In this document: one piece after another, positions 13,139-63,001 of the stretch
Layout: each line of letters begins with the position of its first letter
Position numbering within the stretch: the first letter of the stretch is position 1
Made by a program: the position numbers and the translations under genes
Notes under the pieces: model-generated
Told to the model about the DNA's origin: nothing
The model's input: the letters and a program-made list of their open reading frames with translations, nothing else
The model's database searches: none
Source of the DNA: Octopus sinensis
Taxonomy: Eukaryota
Direction: 5' to 3'
Assembly: GCF_006345805.1 (NCBI RefSeq)
Contig: NC_043012.1
Location: 41,354,001 to 41,418,000 of the forward strand
DNA: 64,000 nucleotides

Positions 13139-13178
<40 letters not shown>

Positions 13179-13641: not shown

Positions 13642-13683
<42 letters not shown>

Positions 13684-18117: not shown

Positions 18118-18371
18118 CAATACTACGATGATATTGAAAAGAATTAATTCTATGCGAAAATCTTACAGTTGAAACAAAAACTGAAGCCACAATACCGTAG
18201 AAATGATAAAAACAACAACAGCAACAACATGTGCAACAACAACAACAACAACATAAATACAAGCACGAGAACAGCAAAAGGAGTTTGAATTATTAGTGTT
18301 GTAAGGTGGAATGCTTTAAATAGTTAACTCTTGGAGAAGAAGAGAATTAGAAAAAGGAGAGAGGGGAAACT

Positions 18372-18408
<37 letters not shown>

Positions 18409-18477
18409 CAGAAGGGGAGAAAAAGGAGAGGGAAAGAAGGAGAATGAATCGGAGGAAGAAAATGAAGAAAAAGAGAA

Positions 18478-18479
<2 letters not shown>

Positions 18480-18528
<49 letters not shown>

Positions 18529-18812
18529 AAGAAGAAGAAGAAGAAGAAGAAAAGAAGTAGGAGAGGAGGAGAAGAAGAAGAAGAAGAAGAAGAAGAAGGA
18601 GAAAGAGAAGAAGAAGGAGAAGAAGATGGCGTCGGCGACAACGACGAAGAAGTAGAGGAAGGAAAAGAAGGGAGAAGGAGGAGGTGGAGGATGATGGTGA
18701 CGGCGACGGCGACGACGAATGAAGAAGAAGAAGAAGAAGAAGAAGAAGAAGAGAAGAAGAAGAAGAAGAAGAAGAAGAAGAAGAAGAAGAAGAAGAAGAA
18801 GAAGAAGAAGAA
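18480..18812. repeat. Compound (TAG)n/(GAA)n purine-rich microsatellite
   Basis: Visible directly. It is the source of several homopolymeric ORFs. Confidence 0.9.
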
Positions 18813-19088
18813 TTGTGGTAAAAGACAAAGAGAGAAAGAAGAAACACTTTAAAGGAAAGAGCGTTAGGAATGATGGAACGAAAATTCTTTATAAATCATC
18901 AAATCCCTTTTCTATTTCCTTTCAAAATGATAATCAAATCACATCAGAAGAATTTGCTTTACCATTCTGATTCTGTAGATTCATGTCTTTAGAGTTGGTT
19001 TATTGCTGATTTTCTTTCCACTATAAGCATCAGTCTCTACCTTTTGGATCGACCACCTGTGGTTATACACAACATTATATACACAAAC

Positions 19089-24909: not shown

Positions 24910-26059
24910 ATATATCAATATATATATATATATATATAATATATATATTATATTATACATATACATACATATTTACAATATAGGTATGTATGCGTATGAA
25001 ATTGAGAGTGTGTGTGGAAATACGGTTCTGTATCCACCTCTGTAGTATCGTCTTTTAGTTATTTACTATATATCTAGTATATCAGTGTATCTAGGACACT
25101 ACTGTTTATTGTTCCCATTTTTATAGACGGTATTATATTTTTGTCATCAGGTCAAGCCAGCAGTCAGAGAATATTCGTTGAGGACATAACAATCACCAGC
25201 GTCTGCTCAATAGGGGCATAAGTGCACATAGGGTAGTTTGTGTGTGTGTGTGCCTGAGCAGGAGAAAGAGAGGGAGAGAAGAGGGGGAGTGAGAAAGGTT
25301 TGAGAGAGAGAGTGGAAGAGGTGAGAGAATGAGAGATAAGAGAGAGGGAAGAGACGGAGAGTGGTTAGAAGAGGTGAGAGAGGAGAGACAGTGAGAGAGA
25401 AGAGAAAGATTGAGACAGTGTCACCACCACTTTTATATCTCGAAACAGAAATATGACGGAATGATAGCAATTCGTGGTTGAGAGTTGCTCCATAAGACAG
25501 AGAGAGGGAGAGAGAGAGAGAAGGAGGTAGGAAGAGAGGGAGAGAGATTGAGAGATTGAGACATTATTGGCTGACTTATGAAGAACATCATTTATATTTT
25601 TAAATAGAAATATTGACAGAATGATACCAATCTTGGTAGAGAGTTCCTCCATAATAAGAAGAACTCTGAATGATGTCGATATATTAATCCCCCGGATTTG
25701 AAGAACCAGAGAAGCAAATTGATTCCAGACAAAATATAGAAGACTTACAAAAATCAACTGAGCTTAATCTTTTACTAGATTAATTTATTATTTGAAGTTT
25801 TTAAACAAGGAAGTTAATATTTGGGAGATTCTTAGCTTTGATGAATGTAAATAAAAATACACTATAAGCTGCTTTACGGTTTAATATGTACGACTTGTGC
25901 TGAGCCGCAACTTTCACAACCTTCCAACAGAAATGTTTCATCGCTTAATCTTCTCATTGAAAAATCATGTTTGGAATGATTTTTCTATTCGACGGCGAGT
26001 TTGTTTGTGGATTGTGTATTGCCTTCCATTTTACCTCTTCTCCCTTCGTAGTTTGTATT

Positions 26060-26290
<231 letters not shown>

Positions 26291-26291
26291 A

Positions 26292-26351
<60 letters not shown>

Positions 26352-26400
26352 TTATAGATATATGTAAATATATATGTTAACACAAACACACACACCACAC

Positions 26401-31145: not shown

Positions 31146-33588
31146 CTTATACACCCAAAGCAATGTTTGGCTCGAGGCTTTAGTAGTAGACATCTGCCCT
31201 CTATTCCCACCGCGGGACTGAACCTGAAATCCTATGGTTGCAACGCAAGCTTCTTAACCCAGACGTCATGCCTTTCTCTATTGTCGATATAGTATTTGTT
31301 TGATGTTGTTTAATGGTTAACTCGATTTCCGTACTCGATGGAACACGAGATCGATCCTCTACATCCGTGTTCCACAAACAGTTTGGCATTACCGACAGGT
31401 CTCATGCAAATCATTTCTTCCGCGGACTGAGCGATCACGCGCTTCAGAAAACCTAATAAAGTGCATAATATATAATGTATTAACGTCGTAACGTATAATC
31501 CACATTTTCCCCCAAAATGTAATGGTCAAAATCCCTAGTGCGTACAATATACGGGGTTAGAAATGAAAATTATTTTCTAAGCAATGTCCGAGTCTCTATT
31601 TGCTGTCCGGTAATGTTTATTCAGACGCATTTTGTGATGTCGGGCGCGAAAAAACTTTAAGCTAAGCCTGAAATCAATGAAGTCGTAAAAAAAATCATCC
31701 ATAACTTGCAGTAAGCAACATTTATTAAACGTTATTAAACGTTATTACTGTTATTTCTTTATTTTCTGCAAACAAAATGCACAAAAAAGCTATACGTTTG
31801 CATTATGTTATATATACAATAATAATAAAGTACGTTCAGGAATCGAAACCACAATATTACGATCATGAATCCAAAACCCTAACCGCTAAGTCACTCTCCT
31901 CCACACAAAGACACACACAGAGATATATACTTTTGTATGGAGTAGGTTTCTTTCAGTTTCCGTATACTAAATCCTCTCACAAGGTTTTACTTGATCTGGA
32001 GCTTTAGAGGAAAACACTTGCCCAAAGTACTCCATGGTGGGGCTTAAGCCAGGGCGATGTGGTTGGGAGGTTAGATCGCCTATAGTTAGGGGTTTATCAG
32101 ATTTGCGCCGATCCAGAACCGAAAAACCACTGAAAACTTACAAACTGCTTTTCATATTGTTTGATAGAGTCAAGTTTCTACTACATCATGGAGGTTATTT
32201 GTAGCACGTTGGACAGAAATATTTCAGGCCTCATTACGGGTGGTCGAATACAGAATGTCATATCGCTGGCCTGTAACAAGACCTCACCAAACTGTTAGCT
32301 GATTATAAAACCCGCGCCATATTTGGTTCTTTTTCATGTCTTATTTTTCGATTTAATCGTAATTTGTTTGAACAAGAGAAGAAATTATTGGAAATGTGGA
32401 AGGAAAGATAATTTATGAAGGGTTTCATTAACGCAGAGAAAATTAAATAGATAATAAGTTAATAGAGGTTAAAGAAAGATAAATCAATTAATTAAAATTG
32501 CATAATTATATTTCAATTTTTTGATCTCTCCATGTAATTATAATAAACAATCAATATATAAGATAACAAATAAGGCAATACTATTTATATTAATAATAAT
32601 AATAGTAATATTAAAATTAAAATAAAATGTCAAAGGAAAGATTCAAGAAAAGGCACTTACAAATTGCTTTGTATAAAGTTTATTTTATAATTAATCACAT
32701 TTACCATAGTATGAAAATATTATCAAATTTAATTTACAGATTAAGTGTTAAAATATGATTACGAATTAATTAAAAAGGATTTGGATTAATTTATTAAAAT
32801 TCCCAAGAAAATAACAGAAAACAAATTCTTTAAAATACAAAAACTTCCGTCTGTAAAAAATAAAAAAAGAGAAAAGGCAATTATGTAAACACAAATCAAC
32901 ATTTATTGTAATTGTGTGAAAAGTAATGATAAATAAATGTAATTAACGATAACAATGGTGATGATGATGGTGATGATGATGGTGATGACGGTTGTGACGA
33001 TGACGATGATGAAGGTGATGATGACGATGAGGATTATGGTGGTGATGATGACGACGACTAAGGTGATGATATATGAAAATTTGGGAGATTAAAAACATGG
33101 TGTAGATTATGATGTTGCTGCTGATGATGAAAATAATGATAAGAAGAGGTATGATTTTGACATTGATAATGATGATCATGATGATGATGGTGACGAAGAA
33201 GGAGATGATGATAATGGCGGCAACAGTGATGATGGCGATAATGATGTTAATTATTATTAGGATGTAAAATAATCGAAATTGAAATTTTCTCCAAGAAAAG
33301 TTGTCTAACTAGAAAATGAGACGAAAGCAAAAATGCGTTCAGAGACACATAGACACACACATGCACGCATAGACACACACTCACACACACACACACGTAC
33401 ACACACAAACACACACATGTATATTTCCCGAAATATATATACATGTATATATATATCTACATATGTATATATACATTTACATACATATGCATATATATAT
33501 ACATACATATATATACTTATATATATATATATACATATCTATATGTATATGTATATACATATATATATATATATATATGCATATATAT

Positions 33589-33632
<44 letters not shown>

Positions 33633-33636
33633 CATA

Positions 33637-33716
<80 letters not shown>

Positions 33717-33746
33717 CATACATACATACATACACACACATACATA

Positions 33747-33777
<31 letters not shown>

Positions 33778-34105
33778 CTGAAACACTCAGCCTTTATCCA
33801 CCCATATATGACTATAATGCATACTTGCAGATATATTCATATGGGGGGGGGGGTGATATATGTGTGTGTGTGTGTTGCGGATGGGTGGGGGGAGGAAACC
33901 AGGATTGGTGAAAATTGAGCTCAGACTGGTGTAATATACATGATTGCAGATGGCGACAGGCGTCAAGAACACGAACGATGTTTGAAATTCATGAAACCGT
34001 AGAAATATTGACTGAAATGATTGCGATAATGACATATACATGTATGCATACACACCGACACACGAACAGGGACACGCACATATTATATATACATATATAT
34101 GTATG

Positions 34106-38113: not shown

Positions 38114-39932
38114 ACTTAACTTAGAATAACTTAGAAAGGTTTTTGGCCAGTATTGGCCCAGGCCATGTCTAACTTAATAGCACCACCTGGCGAAGTCTTT
38201 CAGTTCAGGATTTGGGCACCAAGGCCCATTCGAGCAGAGAGTTATTGTTTGCGGAGACATATCCGGGTGTGGGTGGTTTGTCCGGTACTGTTTGAAGGAA
38301 TTTGTCCAAAGACTTCTTGAATTTTGTGTGGTCAGTTTCTTTTTTGACGTGTCCTAGTGTAATGTTGAAGAGAGCGGGTCCAATTGAGGTGAAATAGTTG
38401 TGCCGTATTGTCGTTATGTGATGCGATTTAGATTTTTGTTGTGGACGGATGGCACGTGGTCCAAGCCTTGGATGCATTTTGAAGGTGATGCCAACATCAT
38501 TCGGACAGTGCTGATGGAATTTTTCCACATCATACAGATAATGTAGCGTTCACGGCGTCGTTGGAGTGAATACAATTTCAGCTTCTCTAGTCTACCCCAG
38601 TAGTCAAGGTCTGACATGCCATCTATCTTTTTTGTGATTGACCTTTGGGGAGCTTCAATTCTCATAATATTTTGTTTTGGTGTAGGGAGACCACAGTGGA
38701 CAGCAGTATTCAAGGTGGGGTCGGGCAAAAGTGGAGAAGAGAAGGATAATAGCGTGGGAATCTCTCGACTGGAAGGTTCTGAGAATCCAGGAACACATTC
38801 TGCGGGCCATGTCAACTTTGCTGCTTATATGTGTAGCCCAGCTTATGTTGTTGTCCACTGTTACTCCCAGGTCTCTGATGTTGTTGGATGCCATGAGAAT
38901 TTCTCCAGAAGGAAGAGAGTATGGGAGTTTCAGAGCGTCCTCCCTTCCAAAGTGGATCAGTTCGAATTTGTCTTCATTTTTAGCAACATGTTATTCTTTT
39001 CCGCCCATTGGACAACAGCCAGTAGGTCTGACTGAAGGTTTATTCGGTCATCCACGCCATTGATGACCTTCTGGAGCTTGGAATCATCAGCGAAGGTTCT
39101 GATGTTGCTGTGTTTGATGGTGTCAGTAATATCATTTATGTAGATGATGAAGAGAAGTGGGCCCAACACAGTGCCTTGTGGGACACCACTGCTGACTTTG
39201 GCTGGCTGGATTTGACTCCTTCGACTACAACATGTTGGGTTCTGTTAGAGAGGAAGCACTTGATCCATTGCAGCAGCTTTCCAGTGACACCAATATTGGA
39301 CAGCTTTCTCAGAAGGATCTTATGATCAACCCTGTCAAAGGCCTTGCTGAAATCAAGGTAGATGACATCAGTGTTGGAACCCTCTCCCAAGGCTCTCAAA
39401 ATGTCATCAAAATGATGCAGTAGCTGCGTCAGGCAATCTCTCCCATTACGGAATCCATGCTGGTTGGGGTTCAGCATATTATGACTCTCAAGGAAGTGAG
39501 TCATACGCGATCTCAGCACCCTCTCAAATACCTTGATGATATGAGAGGTGAGTGAGATTGGACGGTAATTCACGGCAAGCGATTTGTTTCCTTTTTTGAA
39601 AACTGGGACAACAGACTGGGATAGAAGGTCTTCTGGTATATATCCAGCATCCAATGAGTTCCGCCACAATTGGCTAGAGGGGGTGCAAGTTGGTTTTGAC
39701 ACATCTTCAAGACACAAGCAGGGAACCTATCGGGACCTACTGCTGAATTATGCTTCATTTCCTTTATTGCTGCTAAGACATCAGGAGCGCCAAATGTTAT
39801 GTCCGATAAAGTGTATTGGGGAGTAACATCACTGATACAGCCCAGATCAGTCATATCAGGATTGCTGAAAACAGAGCAATATTGTTTCTGCAATATTTCT
39901 CCCATGGTTTTGGCATTGTCTTTTGGCATACA
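38114..39932 (-). mobile_element. 5'-truncated, frameshifted CR1-clade LINE (reverse transcriptase plus C-terminus)
   Basis: Overlapping ORFs give VVPVFKKGNKSLAVNYRPISLTS, QHGFRNGRDCLTQLL, YLDFSKAFDRVDH, LGPLLFIIYINDI...FADDSK, IRDLGVTVD, RPHLEYCCPLWSP and LKLYSLQRRRER. Confidence 0.92.
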
Positions 39933-40622
39933 TTGTATGTATGTATGTATGTATTGTATGTATATATGTACGTATGTATGTATGTATGTATGTATGTATT
40001 GTATGTATGTATGTACGTATGTATGTATGTATGTATTTAATGTATGTATGTATGTATGTATATATGTATGTATGTATGTATTGTATGTATGTATGTATGT
40101 ACGTATGTATGTATGTATGTATGTATGTATGTATTGTATGTATGCATGTATGTATGTATGTATGCATTGTATGTATGTATGTACGTATGTATGTATGTAT
40201 GTATGTATGTATTGTATGTATGTATGTATGTATGTATGTATTTAATGTATGTATGTATGTATGTATGTATGTATATATGTATGTATGTATGTATGTATTG
40301 TATGTATGTATGTATGTATGTATTGTATGTATGTATGTACGTATGTATGTATGTACGTATGTATGTATGTATGTATGTATGTATTGTATGTATGTATGTA
40401 TGCATGTATGTATGTATGTATGTAATGTATGTATGTATGTATGTATGTATTGTATGTATGTATGTATGTATGTATGTATTGTATGTATGTATGTATGTAT
40501 GTATGTGTATGTATGTATGTATTGTATGTATGTATGTATGTATGTATGTATGTATGTATGTATGTATTGTATGTATGTATGTATGCATGTATGTATGTAT
40601 GTATGTATGTATGTATGTATTG

Positions 40623-40656
<34 letters not shown>

Positions 40657-40710
40657 TGTATTGTATTTATGTATGTATGTATGTATGTATTGTATGTATT
40701 TATGTATGTG
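39933..40710. repeat. Long interrupted (TATG)n array, right flank of the CR1 LINE
   Basis: Visible directly. It is the source of the MYVCMYV ORFs. Confidence 0.95.
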
Positions 40711-41056
40711 TATAGAGAAAGCGCGAGATTGAGAAAGATAGAGAGAGTGAGAGCATTACATTATATTACATCTTCTAAAATATGTGTGGTGTCTAGCGTA
40801 TTTACTCTCAGGTCTAAGGCATTCCAAATATGACCATCATGCCTCATCAGAAGACATAGACTACCTCAGTTATCCCAATATGCTTTTAACTTTAAATATA
40901 AATTTGTGAGTAACTGCGATATCCGTGGCTGCTATTTCTGACAAATTCATTAACTGCATAGATACTTCCTTATCGGGCCGCAAGCGATTGTTGGTTGGGT
41001 GTCCACATAGCTGGTTACTTGTTCATTAAGTATTGCTTGATCTCATAATCCCCCAT

Positions 41057-41087
<31 letters not shown>

Positions 41088-41545
41088 ATTTGGCTCAAAA
41101 GCAAATAGCAAGGCCATGTAGGGGGACATGGAGTTAAGTACAGGGTGGTGTTCATGTAAAGAGTTCAGGCCACTTGAGGTCCAGGGAGGCTTTGAACAAA
41201 GCGGTCGTCGGCATCTTCACCATCTCGTCTGGCAGCTTGTTCCACGGATCCGCAACCCGGACGGAGAAAGCTCCTCTCCTTCGATTGAGATGAAATCGTC
41301 GCAGGTAGAGCTTTTCGGAATGACCCCGCAGCCGACGCACTGGAGCAGGAGTGAAGAACAGCTCTTTCGAGAGGTTACACTTTCCGCTTATGATGTTGTG
41401 GGCGAGAATGAGATCACCACGGCGGCGGCGTTTTTCAAGAGAATAAAGGTCGAGCGTCCTCAGCCTTTCTTCGTAGGACAACTTTTTGAGACCATGAACC
41501 ATGCGGGTAGCCAGCTTCTGGACTCTTTCGAGATGGCGTACACAC
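41057..41545 (-). mobile_element. 3' fragment of a second CR1-clade LINE with a (TAAC)n tail
   Basis: LERVQKLATRMVHGLKKLSYEERLRTLDLYSLEKRRRRGDLI...FSVRVADPWNKLP...FKASLD, followed on the minus strand by (AACT)n at 41057-41088. Confidence 0.88.
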
Positions 41546-41913
41546 TGGATCTATAACTTGTGGTCAGCATAACTAATATATTTCACTCATACATAAAAGT
41601 TAACACACGTGTTTAGATTAGCGCTTCTTCTACCTGTCTGTGTGTTGTTCCATGTATCAATTGAATTTTACGTGCTTATACAGAGTTGGCCAAAACTTCA
41701 ACTGGCAGTTTAATTAAAGCCATTTAATTCTAAGATTTATTTAAGTTTAACAACTGAACGGGTTTAACAAAAGCATCTAATTAAGAAACATCATGAAAAC
41801 CGTTCAAACTGAAGTGTTTCTTCAGCGACACATTTTTCCATTCGAATTAATACAGAATTACAGACAGTATTTATGGAATTTTGATTTACTGTTGGGTTAC
41901 TTTTGGTCAACCC

Positions 41914-43924: not shown

Positions 43925-44325
43925 TATTCTTTTATTCTTTAATCCTTTTACTTGCTTCAGGTTGCGGTCATGCTGGGATCGCGCCTTAAAGAATCATTTT
44001 GCCGAACGCATCGACCCCAATACCTAGTTTAGCAAGCCTGGTAATTATTTTATGGCTCTCTTTTACCGAAACGCTATGTTACAGGCACGTAACCACACCA
44101 TCACCGATGTAAAGCGGTTCTGGTGGTGGTGGTGGGGGGGATACAGACACAAGGACAAACACACACACGTATATAAACAAATACATACTCTGGACTTCTT
44201 GCAGGTTCCTTCTACCAAATCCATTCGCAAGTCTTTGGTTGGCCCGATGTTATAGTAGAAGCCACTTGCCTAAGTTGCCATGCAGTCGGATTGAACCCGG
44301 AACTACATGGTTTGGAAGCAAACAT
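43925..44325 (-). mobile_element. Family A SINE (diverged)
   Basis: TCCTTTTACTTGCTTCAG...GGTCATGCTGG...CTACCAAATCCATTCGCAAG...TTGAACCCGGAAC. Confidence 0.75.
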
Positions 44326-44534
44326 GCCTATATATATATATACATACATACATACATACATACATATACATATATATATATATATATCATATTTTACTAT
44401 ATATATATATATATATAAATATATATATATATATGTATGTATGTATATATATGTATATATACACACATGCATACATATGTATAATATACATATATCTATA
44501 TATTGTACATACATATGTATATATACATATCATT

Positions 44535-44638
<104 letters not shown>

Positions 44639-46071
44639 ACAAACACAGATACATATGTATATACATTGAGGTAAATACTCGTACATGCTGTTGTTAAATA
44701 AGAAATGAAACGAACACCGAACTCACTCACCGATATGACGGCCAACCAAGGACTCATCTTGTTGTTGCTTTTCCTCTTCCGGTCGACAACCCAAATGGGG
44801 GGCAGCAAAAGCCCCAATTATTTTTGCACGACATCCACAAAAACGGGATATTGTAAAACTTACCGTTTTAGGGGTTGAATATAAATTCTTGTTATTTTGA
44901 AACGTGAAATATGAATAAGGAAAATGGTGGTGCCAATGTGCAGATCTAACTAAAACTATATCAAACAAGGTGAAGAATAGTGCCAAGAGAGAAAAAAAAG
45001 CACAAGAGCAGTGTGAGTGGTGTACAGTGAATAGAAAACTCTAAAACTATTTGAAGACAAAGAGTGGAACACAAAGTGCGTTGTTGCAGTAAAGTGTGAA
45101 GATAAAGGAAGTAGGTGGTGCATGGTGGCAGAACATGTGGGGGGATTAAACAAGAAGGTTGTACATATTCGCCGTAAAATGAGAAGATGGCAAAAAAGAA
45201 AAATGATGTGCATGGCGGTAGAACGAGATGAAGAAGACAAACATGATGAATAAAAAGAACATGAAGGGACCACGCCCCCAGGGTTTATCTCGTGTTGAAT
45301 GATTGCTTGTTATGATGGAGGCGGTGGCGTGGTGGTGGTGGTGGTGGTGGTGGTGGTAGTTATGCTGGGGGTGGTGGTGATTGTGGGTTTGTTCGGTGAT
45401 GTCGGAAGCAGCGAGTGAAGGTGGTTATGGATGCTGTGATAATGATATCGACGATGGCGACGATGTTGATGCTGACTACGATGCTGCTGATGAAGATGAT
45501 ATGCTGGTGGTGGACATCAATGGAGAGGATGGTGAAGGCAATGAAGAAATGATAAACAGTCGATGATGTGAGGTGAGAGTTAGCGGTGCTGAGGATGACA
45601 GCGATGGAGACGGGCGACATGACAGTGAAAGACAAACAGATGCAACGAAGATATTGGTGCAGCTAAACGGTGGTGACGGTGGTGGTGGTGCTGGTGGTGG
45701 TACTAGTGCAAGTTGTGTGGTGCTGATGGCTTCGGTGCTAGTAGTACTGGTGCTGGTAATACTGGTGCTGCTACAACTGGTGAGAGTGCGAGAATTATAA
45801 ACTAGTGTGGGTGAGAGTGATGCGATTGTTAGTTGCTAGCCTATAAGGTCGGTTGGTTGGTTGGTTGGTTGGTTGGTTGGTTGGTTGGTTGGTGAGTAGG
45901 TGCAGGCTGGTTGAGTGAGGGTGATCTACAGCTACAAGTGTGAGTGTGAGTGTGGGATGGACCATCATGCAGTGCAAGTGAATGTTTAATCTCCTAAGGT
46001 AACGGGTGCAGTAGTTTCAAACATTCTCTCACGTGACACATTCTTACAATAGTTTCCCTACAACGCAAAGT

Positions 46072-49686: not shown

Positions 49687-51554
49687 ATATATAATGCATA
49701 CACACACACATATATATATACACATAAATATATATATATATATATATACATATGTATATTTATGTTTGTATGTGTGAAACTTTGTGAATTACTTATATCT
49801 GTTTAGGTGTATTTGTTACACTTATTTAGTATCGAAATTGGGTTTCGGTGAATCAATGCTTCAGATACAATAAATAATTCATATTTTCTCCAACTATTTC
49901 AAAAGAAATCATTTCATTTCAGTTTTAATATTTAAAAAAAGAATATGTGTTGTTTGCTAAAAAAAAACCAAAAAACTAATAGTTCCATTGATTTCGTTGC
50001 CGTTTTATGCAATGTTTTTCGTTGTCACACTGACGATCGTGGGAAACTTATGAGTTCTCGTTTCTGTTGTTACTGGAATTAATAGTTTCGTTTGTTTCTT
50101 GTTAGGATCGAATAGTTCCTATGATGTTCGTCAGCAAGGTGTGGTGATGTGGAGAGGGAGTGGAGAAACTTATTTAAATACACTAAATTGCATCTTCTCA
50201 CTTGTTTCGTTTCCTTTTTTAATATCTGTAAATATTTTATATTTTCTTAGATATTGTTTACATAAACTGGTTTTTGTTGGTTTGGGTTGTTACTGTTGCT
50301 GTTATTGTTGCTGTTGTTGTTGTTGTTGTTGTTGTTAATATCTGAGGTAATGTTTTTTGACATGGAGGTTATGAACTTTTTTTTTGTAGTTTAATTGTAC
50401 ATTGATATTTAAATATGCAATGAAAAAAATATGGAAAAAAATTTGTTTACTTTTAGTATTCTAATGTCTTCTGTGATGATTTCGAAAAACTAATCTAATC
50501 AATGCTGAATGGCTTTTGAAGAATATTCAAACACATAAACACACACACACACACGAGCACAACAATACACAGGCGCATATATACTAGTTATATATATATA
50601 AATATATGCATGTATATGTATACATAATAAATAAATATATAAATACATATATACACATATATCTATATTTTCGTCTCTCTCTATATATATATACAAATAT
50701 ATATATATATATATATGCATACATATATATATATATGCATAGATATATATATATGCATACATATATATATATGCATACATATATATATATATATATGCAT
50801 ACATATATATATATAAGCACTTGTATAACTGCGCACTAAACCTGTTTACAAGTGCACTTGTGTCCGTATATATACTCGAACATGTGTGTATTTGTGCTTA
50901 TAAAATATTTTCGTGTACGTCTGTATCACTAACAACAGTATCATTATGTATTCCATCTCCCGGGTATTTTATAAATACTCAATGTTTATGTCTACTTCTG
51001 GAGTAATGTCAGTCGGTTAATTACGGTTGTAATATCTATATAGATTAGCATCTTTTTAAAAACACTTTTTTCTCGATGTGTTTTATTTTCTGTTATTTCT
51101 TTTATTATACTTTATTTCAGAATGTAGGAAAGAAAACGTTTCAATAAGGATGTTTGTTCTATAAAAAAATCTTTGAAAAAACTAACTTTATACGAATTTA
51201 AAAAAATATGATCATTTGTGTATCGTAAGAGGATCGGGGTTAATATTTCGTAGGTGAAATATTGATGAGTATTATTGTTATTGTTGTTTTTGTTTGTTTA
51301 TTTTTTTTATCTGGTACGAAGTAATGTTTGGAGCGGAGAGGATTTCTGCTCTCAACGTTATATTTTATTATTAAATCGGACGAAGATTCGAAGGAAATTA
51401 CAACGATGGAAAAAATGCCTTGCAGTATTTCTTGTTTCACTTTATATTTTGTGTTCAAATCCCAACGAGATCAGTTACGATTTTTATCCCCTCTAGAATT
51501 GATAAAATAAAGTCTCAACTTAAAACTAAGGTTCATAATTGCAGGCCGTGTGCG

Positions 51555-52225
<671 letters not shown>

Positions 52226-53240: not shown

Positions 53241-56200
53241 TCATCGCACTGGAATTTCAACGTCTCTCAGATCAGTTTTATCACCATGATTGTCTTCTTT
53301 CGCTGTTGAACTCATTAATCTTTGAGAATTCTCAATGGCATCACCAGAATGTGACAATGTGTCAGCATGTTTTTCGTACGGGTTCTCGATTTTTCCTTTA
53401 TTAACACGTACAGCGTTAATTTTTCCTTCTTTGAACTTATGTGAAGAGGGTTGTGACGAAGATCTTCGCGATATCACTTTGGATGTGAGATCGGTTTTAC
53501 TCAACCCTAGTGAATTCTGTTCTCCATAATCAGTTCTATTTGTGTCTTTAAAATTATTAATGCTATCACTTTTCATCGGTAAAGTATATAAAACATTTAA
53601 CGGCATATGAAGATTTTTTTTAGATAATTTCTTAGAGGGCTTAACTGAATTTGAGGGATTATGGGCATTTGGTAACTCTATGACTGGGGACGATGGATCT
53701 TGAATTCCTAAATACCGTTTTACTAACATTGTATGGCTGAAGTTCCGTTTATGTAGAGAAATCGTATTAGAAGGTTTTGCTGCCGTACGTTTAAACTTTT
53801 GGCGCCTTTTAGCAGCAAACTTACGATTAGCAGTTAAGTAATTTCTACCTACAATTCGTTTACCAACAAATAAGGGATCCTCATCTCGTTTATCTGATAA
53901 CAAGGTATATCGACTCTGGGGATATTTAATTGTTTTACTTACAAAAGAAGGCCCTGGATATCGCTTAATCCCAAGTAAAAAATTTGACCGCGAACGCGAA
54001 ATTTTATCTGCAGAAGATTCTTCATTTCTTCTAAAAATAGGTTTATTTCTAGTTACAGATTCTAACTCCCGTTTGTCCTTAGATACTTGATGATCGACTT
54101 TTAGAGAATTTTTGTTGTGTGTAACTAAATTCATAAGGCGCAATTTTCGTTTTCTTACAAGACCAGGATTGTACTTTGACTTACCTATAACATATTGGTA
54201 AGGTCTATTTCCAGAATGGGTCCCACTAAACCCTCCTTTACTGAGTAATTCTGTGATGTGCTCACGTTTGCCAACGAACAAAGGATTTTTCTCTCGTTTA
54301 CCAGAAAACATAGCATCTCTCTCTCTTTTACCGACAAACATGGGATCCTCTCGTTTACCGACAAACACTGGATCTTCTCTTTTACCTATAAACATGGGAT
54401 CCTCTCTTTTACCGACAAACATAAGATGTTCTCTTTTACCAACAAACATAGGGTTTTCTCTTTTACCCACAAACATAGGATCTTCTCTTTTACCGTCAAA
54501 CAAGGGATCATCTCTTTTACCAACAAACATAGGATTTTCTCTTTTACCGACAAACATAGGCTCTTCTCTTTTACCTATAAACATGGGATCTTCTCTTTTA
54601 CCGACAAACATGGGATCTTCTCTTTTACCGATGAACATGGGATCTTCTCTTTTACCAACAAACATGGGATCTTCTCTTTTACCGACAAACATAGGCTCTT
54701 CTCTTTTACCGATGAACATGGGATCTTCTCTTTTACCTATAAACATGGGATCCTTTCTTTTACCGACAAACATAGGCTCTTCTCTTTTACCTATAAACAT
54801 GGGATCTTCTCTTTTACCGATGAACATGGGATCTTCTCTTTTAACAACAAACATGGGATCTTCTCTTTTACCGACAAACATGGGGTCTTCTCTTTTACCG
54901 ATGAACATAGGATCCTCTCTTTTACCTACAAACATAGGATCTTCTCTTTTACCGACAAACATGGGATCTTCTCTTTTACCAACAAACATGGGATCTTCTC
55001 TTTTACCAACAAACATAGGCTCTTCTCTTTTACCAACAAACATGGGATCTTCTCTTTTACCGACAAACATAGGTTCTTGTCTTTTACCGATGAACATAGG
55101 ATCTTCTCTTTTACCTATAAACACGGGATCCTCTCTGTTACCGACAAACTTGGGATCTTCTCTTTTACCGACAAACACGGGATCTTCTCCTTTACCGACA
55201 AACATAGGCTCTTCTCTTTTACCGATGAACATGGGATCTTCTCTTTTACCAACAAACATAGGATCTTCTCTTTTACCTATAAACATTGGATCTTCTCTTT
55301 TACCGACAAACATGGGATCTTCTCTTTTACCGACAAACATGGGATCTTCTCTTTTACCGACAAACATGGGATCTTCTCTTTTACCTATAAACATGGGATC
55401 TTCTTTTTTACCGATGAACATTGGATCTTCCCTTTTACCAACAAACATGGGATCTTCTTTTTTACCAATGAACATAGGATCTTCTCTTTTGCCAACGAAC
55501 ATAGGATCTTCTCTTTTACCGACAAACATAGGATCTCTTTTACCAACGAACATAGGATCTTCTTTTTTACCGACAAACATGGGATCTTCTCTTTTACCTA
55601 TAAACATAGGATCTTCTCTTTTACCGACAAACATAGGATCTCTTTTACCAACGAACATAGGATCTTCTTTTTTACCGATAAACATAGGATCTTCTCTTTT
55701 ACCAACAAACATGGGATCTTCTCTTTTACCAACAAACATGGGATCTTCTCTTTTACCAACGAACATAGGATCTTCTTTTTTACCGATGAACATGGGATCT
55801 TCTCTTTTACCCACAAACATGGGATCCTCTCTTTTACCGACAAACATGGGATCTTCTTTTTTACCGATGAACATAGGATCTTCTCTTTTACCGACAAACA
55901 TGGGATCTCTTTTACCAACAAACATAGGCTCTTCTCTTTTACCGACAAACATGGGGTCTTCTCTTTTACCGATGAACATAGGTTCCTCTCTTTTACCTAC
56001 AAACATAGGATCTTCTCTTTTACCTATAAACATGGGATCTTCTCTTTTACCTATAAACATGGGATCTTCTCTTTTACCGACAAACATGGGATCTCTTTTA
56101 CCAACAAACATAGGCTCTTCTCTTTTACCGACAAACATGGGGTCTTCTCTTTTACCGATGAACATAGGTTCCTCTCTTTTACCTACAAACATAGGATCTT

Positions 56201-58411
56201 CTCTTTTACCTATAAACATGGGATCTTCTCTTTTACCTATAAACATGGGATCTTCTCTTTTACCGACAAACATGGGATCTTCTCTTTTACCGACAAACAT
56301 GGGATCTTCTCTTTTACCGACAAACATAGGATCTTCTCTTTTACCGACAATCATGGGATCTCTTTTACCGACAAACATGGGGGCTTCTCTTTTACCGATG
56401 AACATAGGATCCTCTCTTTTACCTACAAACATAGGATCTTCTCTTTTACCGACAAACATAGGATCTTCTCTTTTACCAACAAACATAGGATCTTCTCTTT
56501 TACCGACAAACATCGGATCTTCTCTCTTACCAACAAACATGGGATCTCTTCTTTTACCGACAAACATCGGATCTTCTCGTTTACCAACAAACATAGGCTC
56601 TTTCTCTCGTTTACCAACAAACATATGACTTTCTCTTTTACCGACAAACATGGGATCTTCCCCTCGTTTACCCACGAACATAGGATCCACCCCTCGTTTG
56701 CCAACGAATACAGGATCTTCCTCTCGTTTACCGACAAACACTGGATCCTCCTCTCGTCTACCGATAAACATAGGATCTTCTCGTTTCCTGACAAACATAG
56801 GGTTCTTCTCTCGTTTACCCACAAACATTGGATCGTCTCGTTTACCTACAAACCTAGGATTTCTTTTACCGACAAACATAGGCTCTTTCCCCCGTTTACC
56901 GATAAACATTGGATCTTCACGTTTACCAACAATCATAGGCTCTTTCTCTCTTTTACCAACAAACATTGGATCTTCATCACGTTTACCAACAAACATAGGT
57001 TCTTTCCCCCGTTTCCCGACAAACATAGGATCTTCTCGTTTACCGACAAACACAGGATCATCCTCTCGTTTTCCAACAAACATGGGATTTTCCTCACGTT
57101 TACCGACAAACATTGGATCCTGCTCTCTTTTACGACCAAATACAGTCTCCCTGGAAAATGGTGCAACGAAAGCTGAGGGAAATGACGCCGGCTTTTGTTT
57201 TCCCGTTAAAAACGTATCGTTATTTCGTAAAGAACGAAATATTAGATCCGGTTCATGTATATTAGTGTATACAGATCTTGAATTTCGCTTTCTGGGAAAT
57301 AAGGGATGATCGTTTTGTCGTTTGCCTGCCGATACAGAATCATAATGAACTCGTTTGCTTATAATAATGGGATCATCTGGTTTGTTTAAAAACGTGTGAT
57401 CCGGATATTGTTTTCCTCCAAATAAGGGCTCACCATGGAATGGTTTGCCTGTATATATTACATTATCATCGTATATGGGATCGCCTGGCTTGTTTGATAT
57501 GTCCTGGTCAAGATAATCATGTGTAGGTAACTGATTAATATAACCTCTTTTTCCTACAAATAAGGGGTCATCATCTCGTTTGCCTACAAAAAGAGGATCA
57601 TCATCTCGTTTGCCTACAAATAAAGGAGTTTCTAGCTTTTGGTCATGATAATTCTGTTTTCTTCTAAATAATGGAACTTGTATACTTGCTAACAAGGGAT
57701 TTTCCTCCGTACGTCGTTTGTTTACAAATAACCGATGGAGTGAATTCTCAACGGAGAGAGGGTATTCACTCCTTTTGCCTACAAACATGGGATCTTCGTC
57801 CCTTTTACCTACAAACATGGGATCTGGATTTCGTTTACCAACAAAAAAGGGATCTGAATCTCGTTTACCAACAAAAAAGGGGTCTGGATCTCGTTTACCT
57901 ACAAAAAGGGGGTCTGAATCTCGTTTGCCTAGAAAAAAGGGTTCTGAATGTCGTTTACCTACAAAAAACGGATCTGGGTCTCGTTTACCAACAAAGAAAG
58001 GGTCTGGGTCTCTTTTACCTACAGAAAAAGGGTCAGGATTTCTCTTCCTTATATATAAAGTGTTTGGATCCCTTTTACCAACGAAGATGGGGTCTGGATC
58101 CCGTTTACCGACAAATGAAGTGTCTGGATCCTTTTTACCTACAAAGAATGGATCTGGAACCCGTCTACCAACAAAAAGGTGGTCCCGACCCCGTTTTCCT
58201 ACAAAAAAAGGATCTTGATCCCTTTTCCCCACAAAAAATGGATCTAGGTCCCGTTTTCCCACAAAAAATGGATCTGGGTCCCGTTTTCCTACAAAAAAAG
58301 GATCTGGATCCCTTTTATCTATAAACATGGGGTCTGGATCTCGTTTATCAACATATAAATGATGTTCGTCGTTCCGATTACCTAACAACATTGTGTCCGG
58401 ATCCTGTTTAT
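53241..58411 (-). CDS. Exon C (last coding exon) of a neuropeptide precursor: giant PxFVamide / Mytilus-inhibitory-peptide-type array
   Basis: Uninterrupted frame with roughly 120-130 units such as EDPMFVGKR, EDPMFIGKR and DPDPFFVGKR (Gly amide donor plus dibasic site). Strong acceptor CTCCACACTTTCTTTGCAG|AT at 58412/58411, phase 1. Stop TGA at 53243-53241. PMFVamide is the C-terminus of the Mytilus peptides GSPMFVa and GAPMFVa. Confidence 0.93.
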
Positions 58412-59860
58412 CTGCAAAGAAAGTGTGGAGAATTTTCGTATTAGCTGATTTCATACCATTACCTTCTTTATATTATCCTTAATTAATCTAGAATATTTCA
58501 TATTTTTGTTGATATTCTTGTAACTAATTATATTCCCAACGTGAAACAGTAACGGAAAAATATTTATATTAACGGATCAGCTTCGACGAATGACAAGGTC
58601 TTGGCTATATTTCTTTTAAGTTCTGCCGCATCACACATTTCATTTTATACTTTCCAGCTTTTCATCGTGTGTTTACAAGTCTTGGTGCTTCGGGGATTTT
58701 GGTTGAATCTTGATATTTGTATCCCAATGCATTATCCACAAAAATTTGAGTAAAATTCTTTGTTAAAAGCATTTTTTCTTAGATCTTTAGCCAGGGAAAA
58801 AAGTGGTTTCATATGTGCTACTACGTGAAGCATTTAAGCAGAATGCAATAGCTGATTCCCTAATGTAGACTCTGTAACCATTCTAATTGCTATGATGCTA
58901 TGGATTTAAAGGCATTAAATAATCTGCGATATTACTTTTGATAAATATATTTGGAATTCCGTGATTATAACTTGTGATATAGTATTGTCTATTACTTTGC
59001 ACTTACGTTTATTGTAGAAAAGAAAATGTTCTTCGCTATAGTTTGAAATGCTTGTCAAGTCGATCTATTATTTTCCCAGTGTTCTTTAGTTATATTTCGA
59101 ATGAGAACATTGTGACAACTATGCCTGTAAACACGAAAAGGATGAGAGATTCCTGCACCTAAGACATCTGTACTAGTATGGTATTTAGGTTCTCCAAATG
59201 GATTGTATATTTGAACATTGCAAGTCATTTGTAAGGAGGCTATCCATTTAAAACAAGGTTTTTTTTCTTTAAAAGGACAAATGGAGAAAAAATTTGAATA
59301 AATTTGAAATTGCTATCTTGAGTCGCTGAAACGAATTGTGGAACGAATTTGGATATTGAATCCTATTAGCTAAGAATCTATCCTAAGAGCTGGCTGCCAG
59401 CAGATTTAATTTGATGTTATTGGACATTCCTGAAACATTATTACCATTTGATCCACTCGTATGATGCATTTCAGTTGCACCATTTAACGTTGTTTGGAAC
59501 GATTGTCACTTACCATTATTGAAAATTCCCTATAACCTGATATGCCATTCACTGACATTTCTGACGAAAAAAGGGAGAGCGGTAGTTTACCTCTTCCTCT
59601 CTAGATGAAATTTTAAATGCTCAGACTAAATTAAATCGCTAGTAATTTTCTGCGAGAAATGTTTTTCCCGCGAGCTTTTCTATCTATATCAGGAATATTA
59701 GCGAATCTCTAGTGTACACACCAATTTCACTTACCGATTAATACAAATTGTATACCTTTACGTCTGAAAGTATTCCAAATTTTAAGATCAAGCAGTTTAG
59801 CTAAGGTTTCAGTAGCATTGTGCCAAATTCTCGGGTCCAACATTTCCAAATTATTCTTAC

Positions 59861-60508
59861 CTAAAAATTCCATTGGACGCTTATCAAAGTAATCCAATTT
59901 TCTTTTTCCCAAAAATTCCATGGGGCGCTTTCCTAGGAATTCCATACCTCTTTTTCCAAGGAACTCCATTGGGCGTTTACCTAAAAATTCCATTGATCGT
60001 TTTCCAAGAAATTCCATTGGTCTTTTCCCTAAGAATTCCATACGCCTTTTTCCCAAGAATTCCATCCGTCTTTTACCCAAGAATTCCATTCTTCTTTTAT
60101 CATCTAAATCATCTGCTCTCTTTCCCAAGAATTCCATAGGACGTTTCCCCAAAAATTCCATAGGGCGTTTACCCAAAAATTCCATCGGTCTTTTTCCTAA
60201 GAATTCCATTGGTCTTTTTCCTAAGAATTCCATCGGTCTTTTGCCAAGGAATTCCATCGGCCGTTTACCAAGAAATTCCATTGGTCTTTTACCGAGAAAT
60301 TCCATCGGCCTCTTTTCAAGACCCTCATCTTCGTCATCAGTATAGGCAATGAAAGGATCATTCATTACCGATTCATCTGGTAGCGCTACTTCACCATTAT
60401 CTTGCGTATGACCACTAGGGATGTTCAAATAGGAACTGCCTACAAGTGGCTTCATAACTGTGTCCTTCACTGCGTTTTTCACAGACTCTGAATCAGCGGC
60501 ATTGTAAT
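59861..60508 (-). CDS. Exon B of the same precursor: xMEFLamide (EFLamide/TRH-type) array; can extend to a stop at 59727 if the donor is not used
   Basis: 17 xMEFLG-K(R) units (12 PMEFL, 3 RMEFL, 1 SMEFL, 1 GMEFL). Acceptor TGTGTTTCTTTGTATTTCTAG|AT at 60509/60508 and donor TTAG|GTAAGA at 59861/59860, both phase 1. Length is 648 nt, a multiple of 3. Confidence 0.88.
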
Positions 60509-62739: not shown

Positions 62740-62821
62740 CGATGAGATGCCCATTCTTGACCTGTCCCCAAACTGAGGCAGATAGAATTACCACAATGTA
62801 CACAGACAAGTAGATCCTCAT
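62740..62821 (-). CDS. Exon A coding part: signal peptide of the neuropeptide precursor (not in the ORF track)
   Basis: ATG at 62821 gives MRIYLSVYIVVILSASVWG|QVKNGHLI plus one G: basic n-region, hydrophobic h-region and a V-x-G cleavage site. Donor G|GTATGT at 62740/62739 is phase 1, matching both downstream acceptors. An upstream acceptor TTGTCTTTGTTTTCTTTTATTGCAG| at 62850/62849 implies a further non-coding 5' exon. Confidence 0.85.
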
Positions 62822-62941
62822 TTCTAATGTAATTTGCTGCTTGAAGCTTCTGCAATAAAAGAAAACAAAGACAAGGTAAGTAAATTCATCAATTTCTCAA
62901 GTCTATATGTGTATATATATATATATATATATTTATGTATG

Positions 62942-63001
<60 letters not shown>

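What the first reader, a model, noticed from the sequence alone, without database searches (positions are those of the whole stretch)
53241..58411. Extreme peptide copy number: ~120-130 PxFV/PxFI-amide units in one 5.2-kb coding exon
Seen: a ~2.85-kb core (about 54260-57120) of mostly 27-nt units yields about 105 copies, plus about 19 ten-residue units near the exon start and a few scattered ones. This count is estimated from length and period, not tallied exactly. The frame has no stop or frameshift over 1722 codons, although every transposon around it is decayed, which implies purifying selection. The peptides are unusually acidic at the N-terminus (EDPMFVa, DPDPFFVa) compared with the neutral GSPMFVa/GAPMFVa. 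Inference: this is among the most repetitive neuropeptide precursors I know of, and could allow very high peptide output per transcript.
Basis: partly seen in the sequence, partly recalled or inferred. Interest (0 to 1): 0.7.

Follow-up and report, generated by a model that had tools for sequence, protein, structure and literature searches.

The report
Giant octopod MIP neuropeptide exon
This stretch is the huge last coding exon of an octopus-type neuropeptide gene of the known Mytilus-inhibitory-peptide/fulicin family, and it encodes about 112-119 copies of a short muscle-inhibiting-type peptide, more copies than I could find reported for any neuropeptide precursor.

Summary
On the minus strand, 58411 to 53241 is one open frame of 1723 codons. 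It holds 112 strict P-x-F-[VI]-G-[KR][KR] units, 119 with a relaxed motif. These predict 114 short amidated peptides, including EDPMFVa x36 and EDPMFIa x22.

The repeats are under purifying selection. The 77 canonical 27-nt units have 42 distinct DNA sequences but only 16 peptide sequences, with pN/pS 0.13. All unit lengths are multiples of three. The non-repeat tail is open only in this frame.

The exon has no signal peptide of its own. A signal-peptide exon (62821-62740) and a fulicin-like exon (60508-59735, about 16 xMEFLamide units) lie upstream on the same strand. All junctions are phase 1.

This matches the known molluscan MIP/fulicin gene, which is alternatively spliced in the oyster. 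Here the exon order is reversed and the copy number is about five times that of any relative I retrieved.

Transposon homology and an Idiosepius transcript point to an octopod.

Splicing pattern, array length and mature peptide forms remain unverified.

The parts
53241..58411 (-). Giant MIP (PxF[V/I]amide) coding exon: 1723 codons ending in stop codon 53243-53241, entered through the acceptor TTTCTTTGCAG|AT in phase 1
   Evidence: ORF and translation. Acceptor sequence and phase. Motif counts.
57771..58411 (-). N-terminal array of ten-residue units (DPDPFFVGKR type, 30-nt period): 17 G[KR][KR] units, 13 strict PxF[VI] units
   Evidence: TRF array 57774-58347, 19.1 copies. Unit list. Counts. 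pN/pS 0.32 over all 30 ten-residue units of the exon, which include this array and 10-residue units elsewhere.
57129..57770 (-). Degenerate middle region, 214 aa: decayed unit remnants (HRLFVNKR, EPLFGGK, HPLFPRKR and similar) plus 3 intact DDDPLFV/ETPLFV units
   Evidence: Translation. Open only in this frame: 0 stops against 6-19 in the others.
54264..57128 (-). Core array, 955 aa, mostly nine-residue units EDPMF[V/I]GKR (27 nt): 101 G[KR][KR] units, 95 strict
   Evidence: TRF 54322-57133, 103.4 copies. Counts. 77 canonical units give 42 DNA and 16 peptide variants, pN/pS 0.13. The longest exact internal repeat is only 219 nt.
53241..54263 (-). Non-repeat C-terminal tail, 340 aa, with one intact unit (DEDPLFVGKR), then the stop codon
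   Evidence: 0 stops in frame against 9-46 in the other frames, and 0 of 20000 shuffles open. An ATTAAA starts at 52989, 252 nt below coordinate 53241, the stop codon's last base.
59735..60508 (-). Upstream fulicin-like exon: propeptide region plus 16 xMEFLG[KR][KR] units (PMEFL x11, RMEFL x3, SMEFL, GMEFL) and one PMEFLGKN. Phase-1 acceptor TATTTCTAG|AT and phase-1 donor TCG|GTAAGT. If that donor is not used, the frame ends two codons later (…LIGK-stop, stop at 59729-59727).
   Evidence: ORF. Sequence. Model. Counts. 61% identity to Idiosepius notoides transcript 288058. Best real library hits are named fulicin precursors. pN/pS 0.085.
62740..62821 (-). Signal-peptide exon: ATG at 62821, MRIYLSVYIVVILSASVWGQVKNGHLI, phase-1 donor TCG|GTATGT
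   Evidence: Scan for a signal-like ORF with a phase-1 donor. Sequence. N-terminus aligns with Idiosepius MRIYWPVYVVALLFASGKGQ.
58412..59734 (-). Intron between the fulicin-like exon and the MIP exon (or 3' UTR of a fulicin-only transcript). It contains ATTAAA at 59410 and AATAAA at 59013 and no credible signal-peptide exon.

Best explanation
The region is the large 3' coding exon of a cephalopod (probably octopod) MIP/fulicin neuropeptide gene.

Shown here:
- The exon encodes 112-119 tandem Mytilus-inhibitory-peptide-type units. Each is X-X-P-M/F-F-V/I followed by Gly and Lys/Arg-Arg/Lys.
- The units are kept intact by purifying selection.
- The exon lacks its own signal peptide and begins at a strong phase-1 splice acceptor.
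- A signal-peptide exon and a fulicin-like (xMEFLamide) exon lie upstream on the same strand. Their phase-1 junctions keep every exon combination in frame.

Inferred from established prohormone biochemistry:
- After entry into the secretory pathway, prohormone convertases cut after each dibasic pair.
- A carboxypeptidase removes the basic residues, and peptidylglycine alpha-amidating enzyme converts the Gly to an amide.
- One polypeptide would thus release about 114 amidated penta- to octapeptides, mainly hexa- and heptapeptides, dominated by EDPMFVamide (36) and EDPMFIamide (22).
- By analogy with MIPs of bivalves and gastropods, these would act as inhibitory modulators of muscle and neurons.

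Inferred from the oyster gene and from gastropod isoforms:
- The signal exon is probably joined either to the fulicin-like exon, giving a 287-aa precursor ending ...LIGK-stop, or to the MIP exon by skipping it, giving about 1750 aa.
- A read-through 1-2-3 product of 2008 aa is also possible.

The extreme copy number would multiply peptide yield per mRNA and per translation event.
For: - Motif counts and unit list.
- Tandem arrays.
- Selection: third-position variation 0.18 against 0.056 and 0.017, and pN/pS 0.13 for 77 units; 0.32 for the ten-residue units and 0.085 for the MEFL units.
- All unit lengths are 8, 9, 10 or 11 codons, so no frameshifting indel exists.
- Non-repeat middle and tail are open only in this frame.
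- Splice sites and phases; 1-2-3 gives 2008 aa with a single stop.
- No alternative signal exon in the 1.3-kb gap.
- An Idiosepius notoides transcript joins a homologous signal peptide to PMEFLGKR repeats.
- HMMER hits: Physella MIP/fulicin-type protein and PRQFVamide precursors; named fulicin precursors of Deroceras, Aplysia and Biomphalaria.
- Deroceras fulicin (P0151) and Deroceras MIP2 share an identical 21-residue N-terminus.
- The C. gigas gene LOC105328755 produces MIP and fulicin precursors by alternative splicing, with peptides seen by mass spectrometry (PMC8398477).
- MIPs inhibit muscle contraction in bivalves and gastropods (PMC6425005).
Against: - No transcript, read or peptide data were available, so the splicing pattern, the absence of internal introns, the true array length and the mature peptide forms are unverified.
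- A whole-ORF HMMER search of 5.8 billion proteins found nothing. No cephalopod orthologue of the MIP exon was retrieved.
- The exon order here (fulicin-like first, then MIP) is the reverse of the oyster and Physella arrangement.
- Three GTAAGT motifs lie in the tail (54184, 53942, 53824), so the 3' end of the coding sequence could differ.
- The acidic N-termini are unlike any characterised MIP. Activity and receptor therefore cannot be assumed.
Confidence: 0.82

Rival explanations
1. There is one constitutive giant precursor. Exons 1, 2 and 3 are always joined into a 2008-aa, 234-kDa prepropeptide, which releases both about 16 xMEFLamides and about 114 PxF[V/I]amides from the same cells, with no isoform switching.
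For: The donor TCG|GTAAGT at 59735/59734 matches the GTAAGT consensus, the acceptor at 58411 is strong, and both are phase 1. The joined product has a single stop. Combined MIP + fulicin-type proteins exist in Physella (P0003) and Modiolus.
Against: The exon-2 frame ends ...LIGK-stop exactly at that donor, as gastropod fulicin precursors end ...FIGK-stop. Using the donor would destroy that terminal amidation site. The oyster, and by inference Deroceras and Aplysia, make separate MIP and fulicin isoforms from one signal exon. Polyadenylation-like hexamers lie in the gap.
Confidence: 0.3
2. The copy number is an assembly artefact. The array is real but was expanded or mis-joined during assembly, so the true number of units is much lower.
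For: Tandem arrays of 27-nt units are hard to assemble. I had no reads or second assembly to compare (searches found no other copy).
Against: The units are heterogeneous: 42 distinct 27-mers among 77. The longest exact internal repeat is 219 nt, and mean identity at lag 27 is only 76%. The frame is never broken. These features are not what collapsed or duplicated assembly of identical repeats gives.
Confidence: 0.08
3. The array is a decaying or non-functional minisatellite. The frame is open only because the repeat unit happens to lack stop codons, and the exon is no longer expressed as a peptide precursor.
For: Two plus-strand frames are also open across much of the array (ORFs of 972 and 791 aa; 0-1 stops). 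Openness within the array alone is therefore weak evidence.
Against: Substitutions concentrate at third codon positions of the minus-strand frame, with pN/pS 0.13. Gly and the dibasic pair are almost invariant. The 214-aa middle and 340-aa tail are open only in this frame. The splice acceptor and the upstream exons are intact.
Confidence: 0.03
4. The mature peptides are shorter than predicted. The acidic N-terminal residues act as built-in spacers that are trimmed. For example, stepwise X-Pro dipeptidyl aminopeptidase removal could turn DPDPFFVa into FFVa and DPMFVa into MFVa, or the N-terminal Glu could be cyclised. The bioactive species would then differ from EDPMFVa and the others.
For: Each unit is charge-balanced (two acidic and two basic residues) and has no separate spacer, unlike gastropod precursors with acidic spacers. 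Processing at acidic residues and by dipeptidyl aminopeptidase is described for cnidarian high-copy precursors (PMC9545775).
Against: E and D at positions 1-2 are themselves conserved (96-99% at first and second codon positions), which suggests they are part of the selected product. EDP- is not an X-Pro dipeptidyl substrate. No molluscan precedent was found in what I read.
Confidence: 0.15

Closest known systems
Crassostrea gigas MIP/fulicin gene LOC105328755 (PMC8398477)
   Same: One gene carries a shared signal-peptide exon, a PxF[V/I]amide (MIP) coding part and a fulicin-type (x-x-E/D-F-L/V-amide) coding part. The separate precursors are produced by alternative splicing.
   Different: The oyster MIP precursor holds roughly ten units, against 112-119 here. 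In the oyster the MIP part precedes the fulicin part, and here the fulicin-like exon comes first. In the oyster the fulicin part is out of frame in MIP transcripts, and here all junctions are phase 1 so read-through stays in frame. Splicing here is not demonstrated.
Gastropod MIP-related precursors (Aplysia AMRP, Deroceras MIP1/2, Theba PXFVamide; sequences in the PMC6425005 supplement) and gastropod fulicin precursors (Aplysia NP_001191590, Deroceras ARS01371.1)
   Same: They share the P-x-F-V/I-Gly-dibasic units and the xEF[LV]-Gly-dibasic units. A signal peptide is shared between the MIP and fulicin products. The fulicin-type precursor ends in ...IGK-stop.
   Different: Gastropod units are neutral or basic at the N-terminus (GAPRFV, RAPKFV) and are separated by acidic spacers, with about 20-30 units at most. 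The octopod units are acidic (ED-, DPDP-), spacer-free and about five times more numerous.
Aplysia leucokinin precursor (PMC9562341)
   Same: It is a very long molluscan multi-copy amidated-peptide precursor of similar overall size. [quoted passage not shown]
   Different: It is an unrelated peptide family. It has 66 copies in total, 40 unique, and the commonest peptide occurs 20 times. Here there are about 114 (+16) copies, and the commonest peptide occurs 36 times.
Cnidarian high-copy preprohormones such as Antho-RFamide (PMC9545775)
   Same: They are compact tandem units of a short amidated peptide with acidic residues at the N-terminal side of each unit.
   Different: They have 19-21 copies and belong to an unrelated family and phylum. 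N-terminal processing there occurs at the acidic residues, whereas here each unit is bounded by dibasic sites.
Lymnaea FMRFamide gene (from my own knowledge, not checked here)
   Same: A common signal-peptide exon is spliced in a mutually exclusive way to exons encoding different multi-copy amidated peptides.
   Different: It is a different peptide family with far fewer copies. For the present gene this behaviour is only inferred.

Membership tests
Mytilus inhibitory peptide (MIP / PxFVamide) precursor | Multiple peptides ending P-x-F-V/I, each followed by Gly (amide donor) and a dibasic cleavage site | tested here: met
   112 strict P.F[VI]G[KR][KR] units, and 114 predicted amidated peptides.
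Mytilus inhibitory peptide (MIP / PxFVamide) precursor | N-terminal signal peptide for the secretory pathway | tested here: met
   The signal peptide is not in this exon. A signal-like exon at 62821-62740 (MRIYLSVYIVVILSASVWGQ...) has a compatible phase-1 donor and aligns with the N-terminus of the Idiosepius transcript. No signal-peptide predictor was available, and its joining to this exon is inferred.
Mytilus inhibitory peptide (MIP / PxFVamide) precursor | Detectable sequence homology to named MIP precursors | tested here: inconclusive
   The whole ORF gave no hit. A non-repeat composite hit the Physella MIP/fulicin-type protein at E=5.5e-6, but also PRQFVamide precursors. Pfam has no such family, and its hits were repeat artefacts.
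Mytilus inhibitory peptide (MIP / PxFVamide) precursor | Shares a gene and signal exon with a fulicin-type coding exon, as in C. gigas and Capitella | tested here: met
   The fulicin-like exon lies 1.3 kb upstream on the same strand, all junctions are phase 1, and no separate signal exon lies between them. Actual splicing is not testable here.
Mytilus inhibitory peptide (MIP / PxFVamide) precursor | Peptides inhibit muscle contraction or neuronal activity | not testable with these tools
   This needs synthetic peptides and bioassays.
Fulicin / EFLGamide (protostome TRH-type) precursor (applies to upstream exon 60508-59735, not to the finding's exon) | Repeated x-x-E/D-F-L/V-Gly-dibasic units | tested here: met
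   16 xMEFLG[KR][KR] units.
Fulicin / EFLGamide (protostome TRH-type) precursor (applies to upstream exon 60508-59735, not to the finding's exon) | HMMER similarity to named fulicin precursors | tested here: met
   The best genuine hits of 1.84 billion representatives are P0124 (an unnamed protein of Candidula unifasciata with a fulicin-type architecture, E=1.8e-55) and further down P0151, P0144 and P0134, named fulicin or fulicin-like in Deroceras, Aplysia and Biomphalaria. Scores are driven largely by the repeats.
Fulicin / EFLGamide (protostome TRH-type) precursor (applies to upstream exon 60508-59735, not to the finding's exon) | D-amino acid at position 2 of the mature peptide | not testable with these tools
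   This needs chiral analysis of native peptides.
PRQFVamide precursor | Units of the P/L/S-R-Q/D/E-F-V type, encoded by a gene separate from MIP | tested here: inconclusive
   PRQFVamide precursors were the top word-index hits for the composite query and also hit exon 2. However, exon 2 has Met, not Arg, at position 2. It ends ...LIGK-stop like fulicin precursors, and it sits in a MIP gene like fulicin. Octopus 'PRQFVamide' reported in the literature may be this exon or another gene.

The most novel reading that the evidence does not exclude
This may be the highest-copy neuropeptide precursor described in any animal, with about 114 MIP-type peptides, or about 130 amidated peptides if the fulicin-like exon is included. 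In this reading, octopods re-ordered the ancestral MIP/fulicin gene so that the Gly-Lys-stop end of the fulicin-type precursor (GGT AAG TGA) doubles as a consensus splice donor. A neuron could then switch between a small TRH-type (fulicin-like) precursor and a massively amplified inhibitory-peptide precursor, whose peptides carry a new acidic N-terminus and possibly a new receptor specificity.
Probability: 0.3. Interest if true: 0.65.

Novelty: new variant of a known kind. Interest (0 to 1): 0.5.

Why it matters
Copy number within a precursor is one way an animal sets neuropeptide dose. A precursor that yields more than 100 nearly identical peptides per translation is an extreme case. It can be used to ask why such amplification evolves, for example for volume transmission, hormonal release, or control of large muscle fields in cephalopods. 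It can also show how long coding arrays are kept in frame.

The result gives cephalopod neurobiology a concrete peptide set to look for: EDPMFVa, EDPMFIa, DPDPFFVa and PMEFLa. It also extends the MIP/fulicin (TRH-type) shared-gene arrangement from bivalves and annelids to cephalopods. No receptor for FV/FL-amide peptides is known in molluscs (PMC8557429).

Tried and rejected
- A HMMER search of the whole 1737-aa ORF against 5.8 billion proteins found no hit, probably because of repeat and composition filtering.
- Exact-protein look-ups of the big ORF and two versions of the exon-2 ORF in public assemblies found nothing on record.
- Literature searches for PMFVamide and MEFLamide strings found nothing relevant. 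Searches for fulicin or MIP in cephalopods found no cephalopod characterisation. Fujisawa 1999 is not held.
- Pfam scans gave only spurious repeat-summed hits (PWWP_KDM3B, NUDIX-like) with no individually significant stretch.
- I looked for a separate signal-peptide exon between the two peptide exons and found none credible.
- I looked for further FxG-dibasic arrays elsewhere in the window and found none.
- Long library hits P0125 and P0127 (3713 and 2049 aa) turned out to be unrelated repeat proteins.
- I tested homology between the exon-2 tail, or the post-array segment of exon 3 (EHITELLSK...YQYVIGK), and gastropod fulicin C-termini. BLASTP was not significant outside the repeats. Only the shared ...IGK-stop ending and similar spacing remain as a suggestion.
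- The phase-0 donor CAG|GTCAAG right after the signal peptide was rejected because it breaks the frame in exon 2.


Full report
**1. The observation**

The feature lies on the minus strand. A single ORF runs from 58454 to 53241 (1737 aa). From there to the stop there are 1723 codons without interruption.

Exact motif counts on the translation are:

| Motif | Count |
|---|---|
| P.F[VI]G[KR][KR] | 112 |
| ..[FLI][VIL]G[KR][KR] | 119 |
| G[KR][KR] sites | 124 |
| predicted short amidated peptides | 114 (41 distinct sequences) |

The predicted peptides are led by EDPMFVa (36), EDPMFIa (22), EEPMFVa (6), DPDPFFVa (4) and DPMFVa (4). Tandem Repeats Finder reports a 27-nt array at 54322-57133 (103.4 copies) and a 30-nt array at 57774-58347 (19.1 copies).

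**2. Anatomy of the exon**

- N-terminal array of ten-residue DPDPFFVGKR-type units: 58411-57771, 17 units.
- Middle region, 214 aa: 57770-57129. It consists of visibly decayed units (HRLFVNKR, EPLFGGK, HPLFPRKR and similar) plus three intact ones.
- Core, 955 aa: 57128-54264. It has 101 units, mostly EDPMF[V/I]GKR.
- Non-repeat tail, 340 aa: 54263-53241. It has one intact unit (DEDPLFVGKR).

Unit lengths are 8, 9, 10 or 11 codons, so no indel breaks the frame.

**3. Is it selected or merely a stop-free repeat?**

Openness inside the array is weak evidence by itself, because two plus-strand frames are also nearly open there. The decisive test is the pattern of variation among units.

- The 77 canonical 27-nt units comprise 42 different DNA sequences but only 16 peptide sequences.
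- The mean minor-base fraction is 0.056, 0.017 and 0.180 at codon positions 1, 2 and 3.
- pS is 0.43, pN is 0.057 and pN/pS is 0.13.
- The main amino-acid polymorphism is the conservative V/I. Gly and the dibasic pair are almost invariant.
- The ten-residue units give pN/pS 0.32.
- The non-repeat tail has no stop in 339 codons, against 9-46 in the other five frames. None of 20000 shuffles stayed open. The middle region behaves the same way.

The array is also heterogeneous. The longest exact internal repeat is 219 nt, and identity at lag 27 is 76%. This argues against a trivial assembly duplication, although only long reads can settle the length.

**4. Gene context**

The exon's own N-terminus (MKSANTKILHTFF...) is not a signal peptide. 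Two further exons lie upstream on the same strand.

*The fulicin-like exon.* An ORF at 60590-59727 contains a propeptide region and 16 xMEFLG[KR][KR] units. A polypyrimidine/AG acceptor places the exon start at 60508.

An Idiosepius notoides transcript in the supplement of PMC6425005 reads MRIYWPVYVVALLFASGKGQEFNAAEPDAVKNAVK...KRPMEFLGKR.... It is 61% identical to this exon once a signal peptide is prefixed.

*The signal exon.* Scanning upstream found that signal peptide at 62821-62740 (MRIYLSVYIVVILSASVWGQVKNGHLI), with a phase-1 donor TCG|GTATGT.

*Phases and products.* All junctions are phase 1: the exon-1 donor, the exon-2 acceptor, two candidate exon-2 donors (59861 and 59735) and the exon-3 acceptor.

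- Exons 1-2-3 give a 2008-aa, 234-kDa product with one stop.
- Exons 1-3 are also in frame.
- If the donor at 59735 is not used, exon 2 terminates two codons later (...GIQFVLIGK-stop). The donor GTAAGT is formed by the Gly-Lys-stop codons GGT AAG TGA.
- No signal-like exon lies in the 1.3-kb gap, and no other such arrays lie in the window.

**5. What family is it?**

P-x-F-V/I-amide peptides are the Mytilus inhibitory peptides (MIP, PxFVamide), a repetitive lophotrochozoan family with inhibitory actions on muscle (PMC6425005).

A composite of the non-repeat parts hit a Physella protein (P0003). That protein has PxFV units followed by YDFL/EFL units and ends ...PEFIGK-stop. The composite also hit PRQFVamide precursors.

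A filter-free HMMER search with exon 2 found, as best genuine hits, proteins of fulicin-type architecture. Further down the list were proteins that their sources name fulicin or fulicin-like precursors: Deroceras ARS01371.1, Aplysia NP_001191590 and Biomphalaria. Deroceras fulicin and Deroceras MIP2 share an identical 21-residue N-terminus, which implies one gene.

This is documented in the oyster. [quoted passage not shown] Fulicin/EFLGamide peptides are regarded as protostome TRH orthologues (PMC8398477).

The window therefore holds the cephalopod version of the MIP/fulicin gene, and the finding's exon is its MIP part.

**6. Taxon**

A reverse-transcriptase fragment in the window has its best named match in Octopus sinensis (77% identity). 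Together with the Idiosepius orthologue at 61%, this points to a cephalopod, probably an octopod. No cephalopod protein matching either peptide exon was present in the protein collections searched.

**7. Mechanism**

*Shown:* the coding capacity, the cleavage and amidation signals, the selection, and the splice-compatible architecture.

*Inferred:* the standard prohormone route (signal peptide, convertase cleavage at KR/KK/RR, carboxypeptidase trimming, amidation of the Gly-extended peptide) would yield about 114 amidated penta- to octapeptides per polypeptide. About 41% of the exon's residues would end up in mature peptide (710 of 1723).

Each unit is charge-balanced (two acidic and two basic residues) and spacer-free. 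Gastropod precursors instead intersperse acidic spacers. The acidic N-termini may therefore be spacers absorbed into the peptide.

Whether the N-termini are trimmed or cyclised is unknown. Also unknown is whether the cell makes one giant precursor or alternative MIP-only and fulicin-only precursors. I favour alternative use (about 0.5), given the oyster and gastropod precedents and the ...IGK-stop ending. Constitutive 1-2-3 splicing is about 0.3.

**8. How unusual is the copy number?**

| Precursor | Copies | Source |
|---|---|---|
| Cnidarian precursors called 'very high copy number' | 19-21 | PMC9545775, |
| Lottia FCAP | 28 | PMC6425005, |
| Best 150 library relatives (MIP, fulicin, FVamide types) | at most 24 G[KR][KR] sites | |
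| This exon | 112-119 | |

This exon exceeds every comparator I could find. I found no open paper describing a cephalopod MIP or fulicin precursor. An octopus 'PRQFVamide' homologue has been cloned and might correspond to exon 2.

**9. Verdict**

This is a real, selected, very high-copy MIP-type neuropeptide exon within a known kind of gene (MIP/fulicin). It is a new variant in three respects: a copy number about five times that of relatives, acidic spacer-free units, and a reversed exon order with fully in-frame junctions. It is of moderate interest. The family and logic are known, but the scale is exceptional and the peptides are directly testable. The array length, the splicing and the mature peptides need reads, transcripts and mass spectrometry.

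Noticed in passing
window 59735-60508 (minus strand): This is a fulicin-like exon with 16 xMEFLG[KR][KR] units plus one PMEFLGKN. All 14 eight-residue units differ at the DNA level but encode only 4 peptide variants (pN/pS 0.085). By analogy with fulicin and fulyal, which carry a D-amino acid at position 2 (my own knowledge), PMEFLamide might carry D-Met.
   Followed up: partly
window 59727-59740 (minus strand): The Gly-Lys-stop end of the fulicin-like reading frame (GGT AAG TGA) is at the same time a consensus 5' splice site (G|GTAAGT) in phase 1, matching the acceptor of the MIP exon. A second strong phase-1 donor (TAG|GTAAGA) lies at 59861/59860, after the last PMEFL unit.
   Followed up: partly
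window 62740-62821 (minus strand): The signal-peptide exon has 7 extra residues (VKNGHLI) compared with the Idiosepius transcript, because the only frame-compatible donor lies 21 nt beyond the Gly-Gln where Idiosepius splices. An acceptor-like TTTTATTGCAG lies just upstream of the ATG, which suggests a further 5' UTR exon. A long (TA)n run sits at about 62930-63000.
   Followed up: partly
window 57129-57770 (minus strand): The region between the two arrays is a graveyard of decayed PxFV units that is still kept in frame. This suggests birth-and-death turnover of units within one exon: an older 30-nt array, then decayed units, then a younger 27-nt array.
   Followed up: partly
window 54170-54263 (minus strand): Directly after the core array the sequence EHITELLSKGGFSGTHSGNRPYQYVIGK|S loosely resembles the ...ALLSNTGL...YPEFIGK-stop end of gastropod fulicin precursors. 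It again carries GGTAAGT at the Gly-Lys codons (54185). BLASTP did not support homology. Two more GTAAGT motifs lie in the tail (53942, 53824).
   Followed up: partly
window 53241-58411 (minus strand): The Gly-Lys codons give GGTAAA 106 times in the exon, a weak donor-like motif in almost every unit. The purine-rich coding strand offers no matching polypyrimidine acceptors, so internal splicing looks unlikely, but this was not tested.
   Followed up: no
proteins P0151 and P0144 (library hits) and Deroceras MIP2 / Aplysia kurodai MIP-related precursor in the PMC6425005 supplement: Deroceras fulicin and Deroceras MIP2 share an identical 21-residue N-terminus (MQRPTLLVFVTSLIVLLVRAE). The Aplysia fulicin-like precursor shares its signal peptide with the Aplysia MIP-related precursor. 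MIP and fulicin therefore appear to be isoforms of one gene in gastropods too, diverging at a D/E codon, as at the octopod phase-1 junction.
   Followed up: partly
window 38400-41600: These are fragments of a reverse-transcriptase-bearing retroelement (193-aa RT piece at 39136-39717, Pfam RVT_1 in its relatives). The best named match is an Octopus sinensis protein at 77% identity. No intact element ORF lies anywhere in the window.
   Followed up: partly
window 1153-2046, 5318-6979, 13026-13829, 18316-18847, 25897-26380, 33333-33918, 39799-40833, 44291-44674, 51420-51812: There are many long microsatellite and low-complexity tracts (TA, CA/TG, ATT, CTT and tetranucleotide runs) that create spurious ORFs. 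Overall G+C is about 34%.
   Followed up: no
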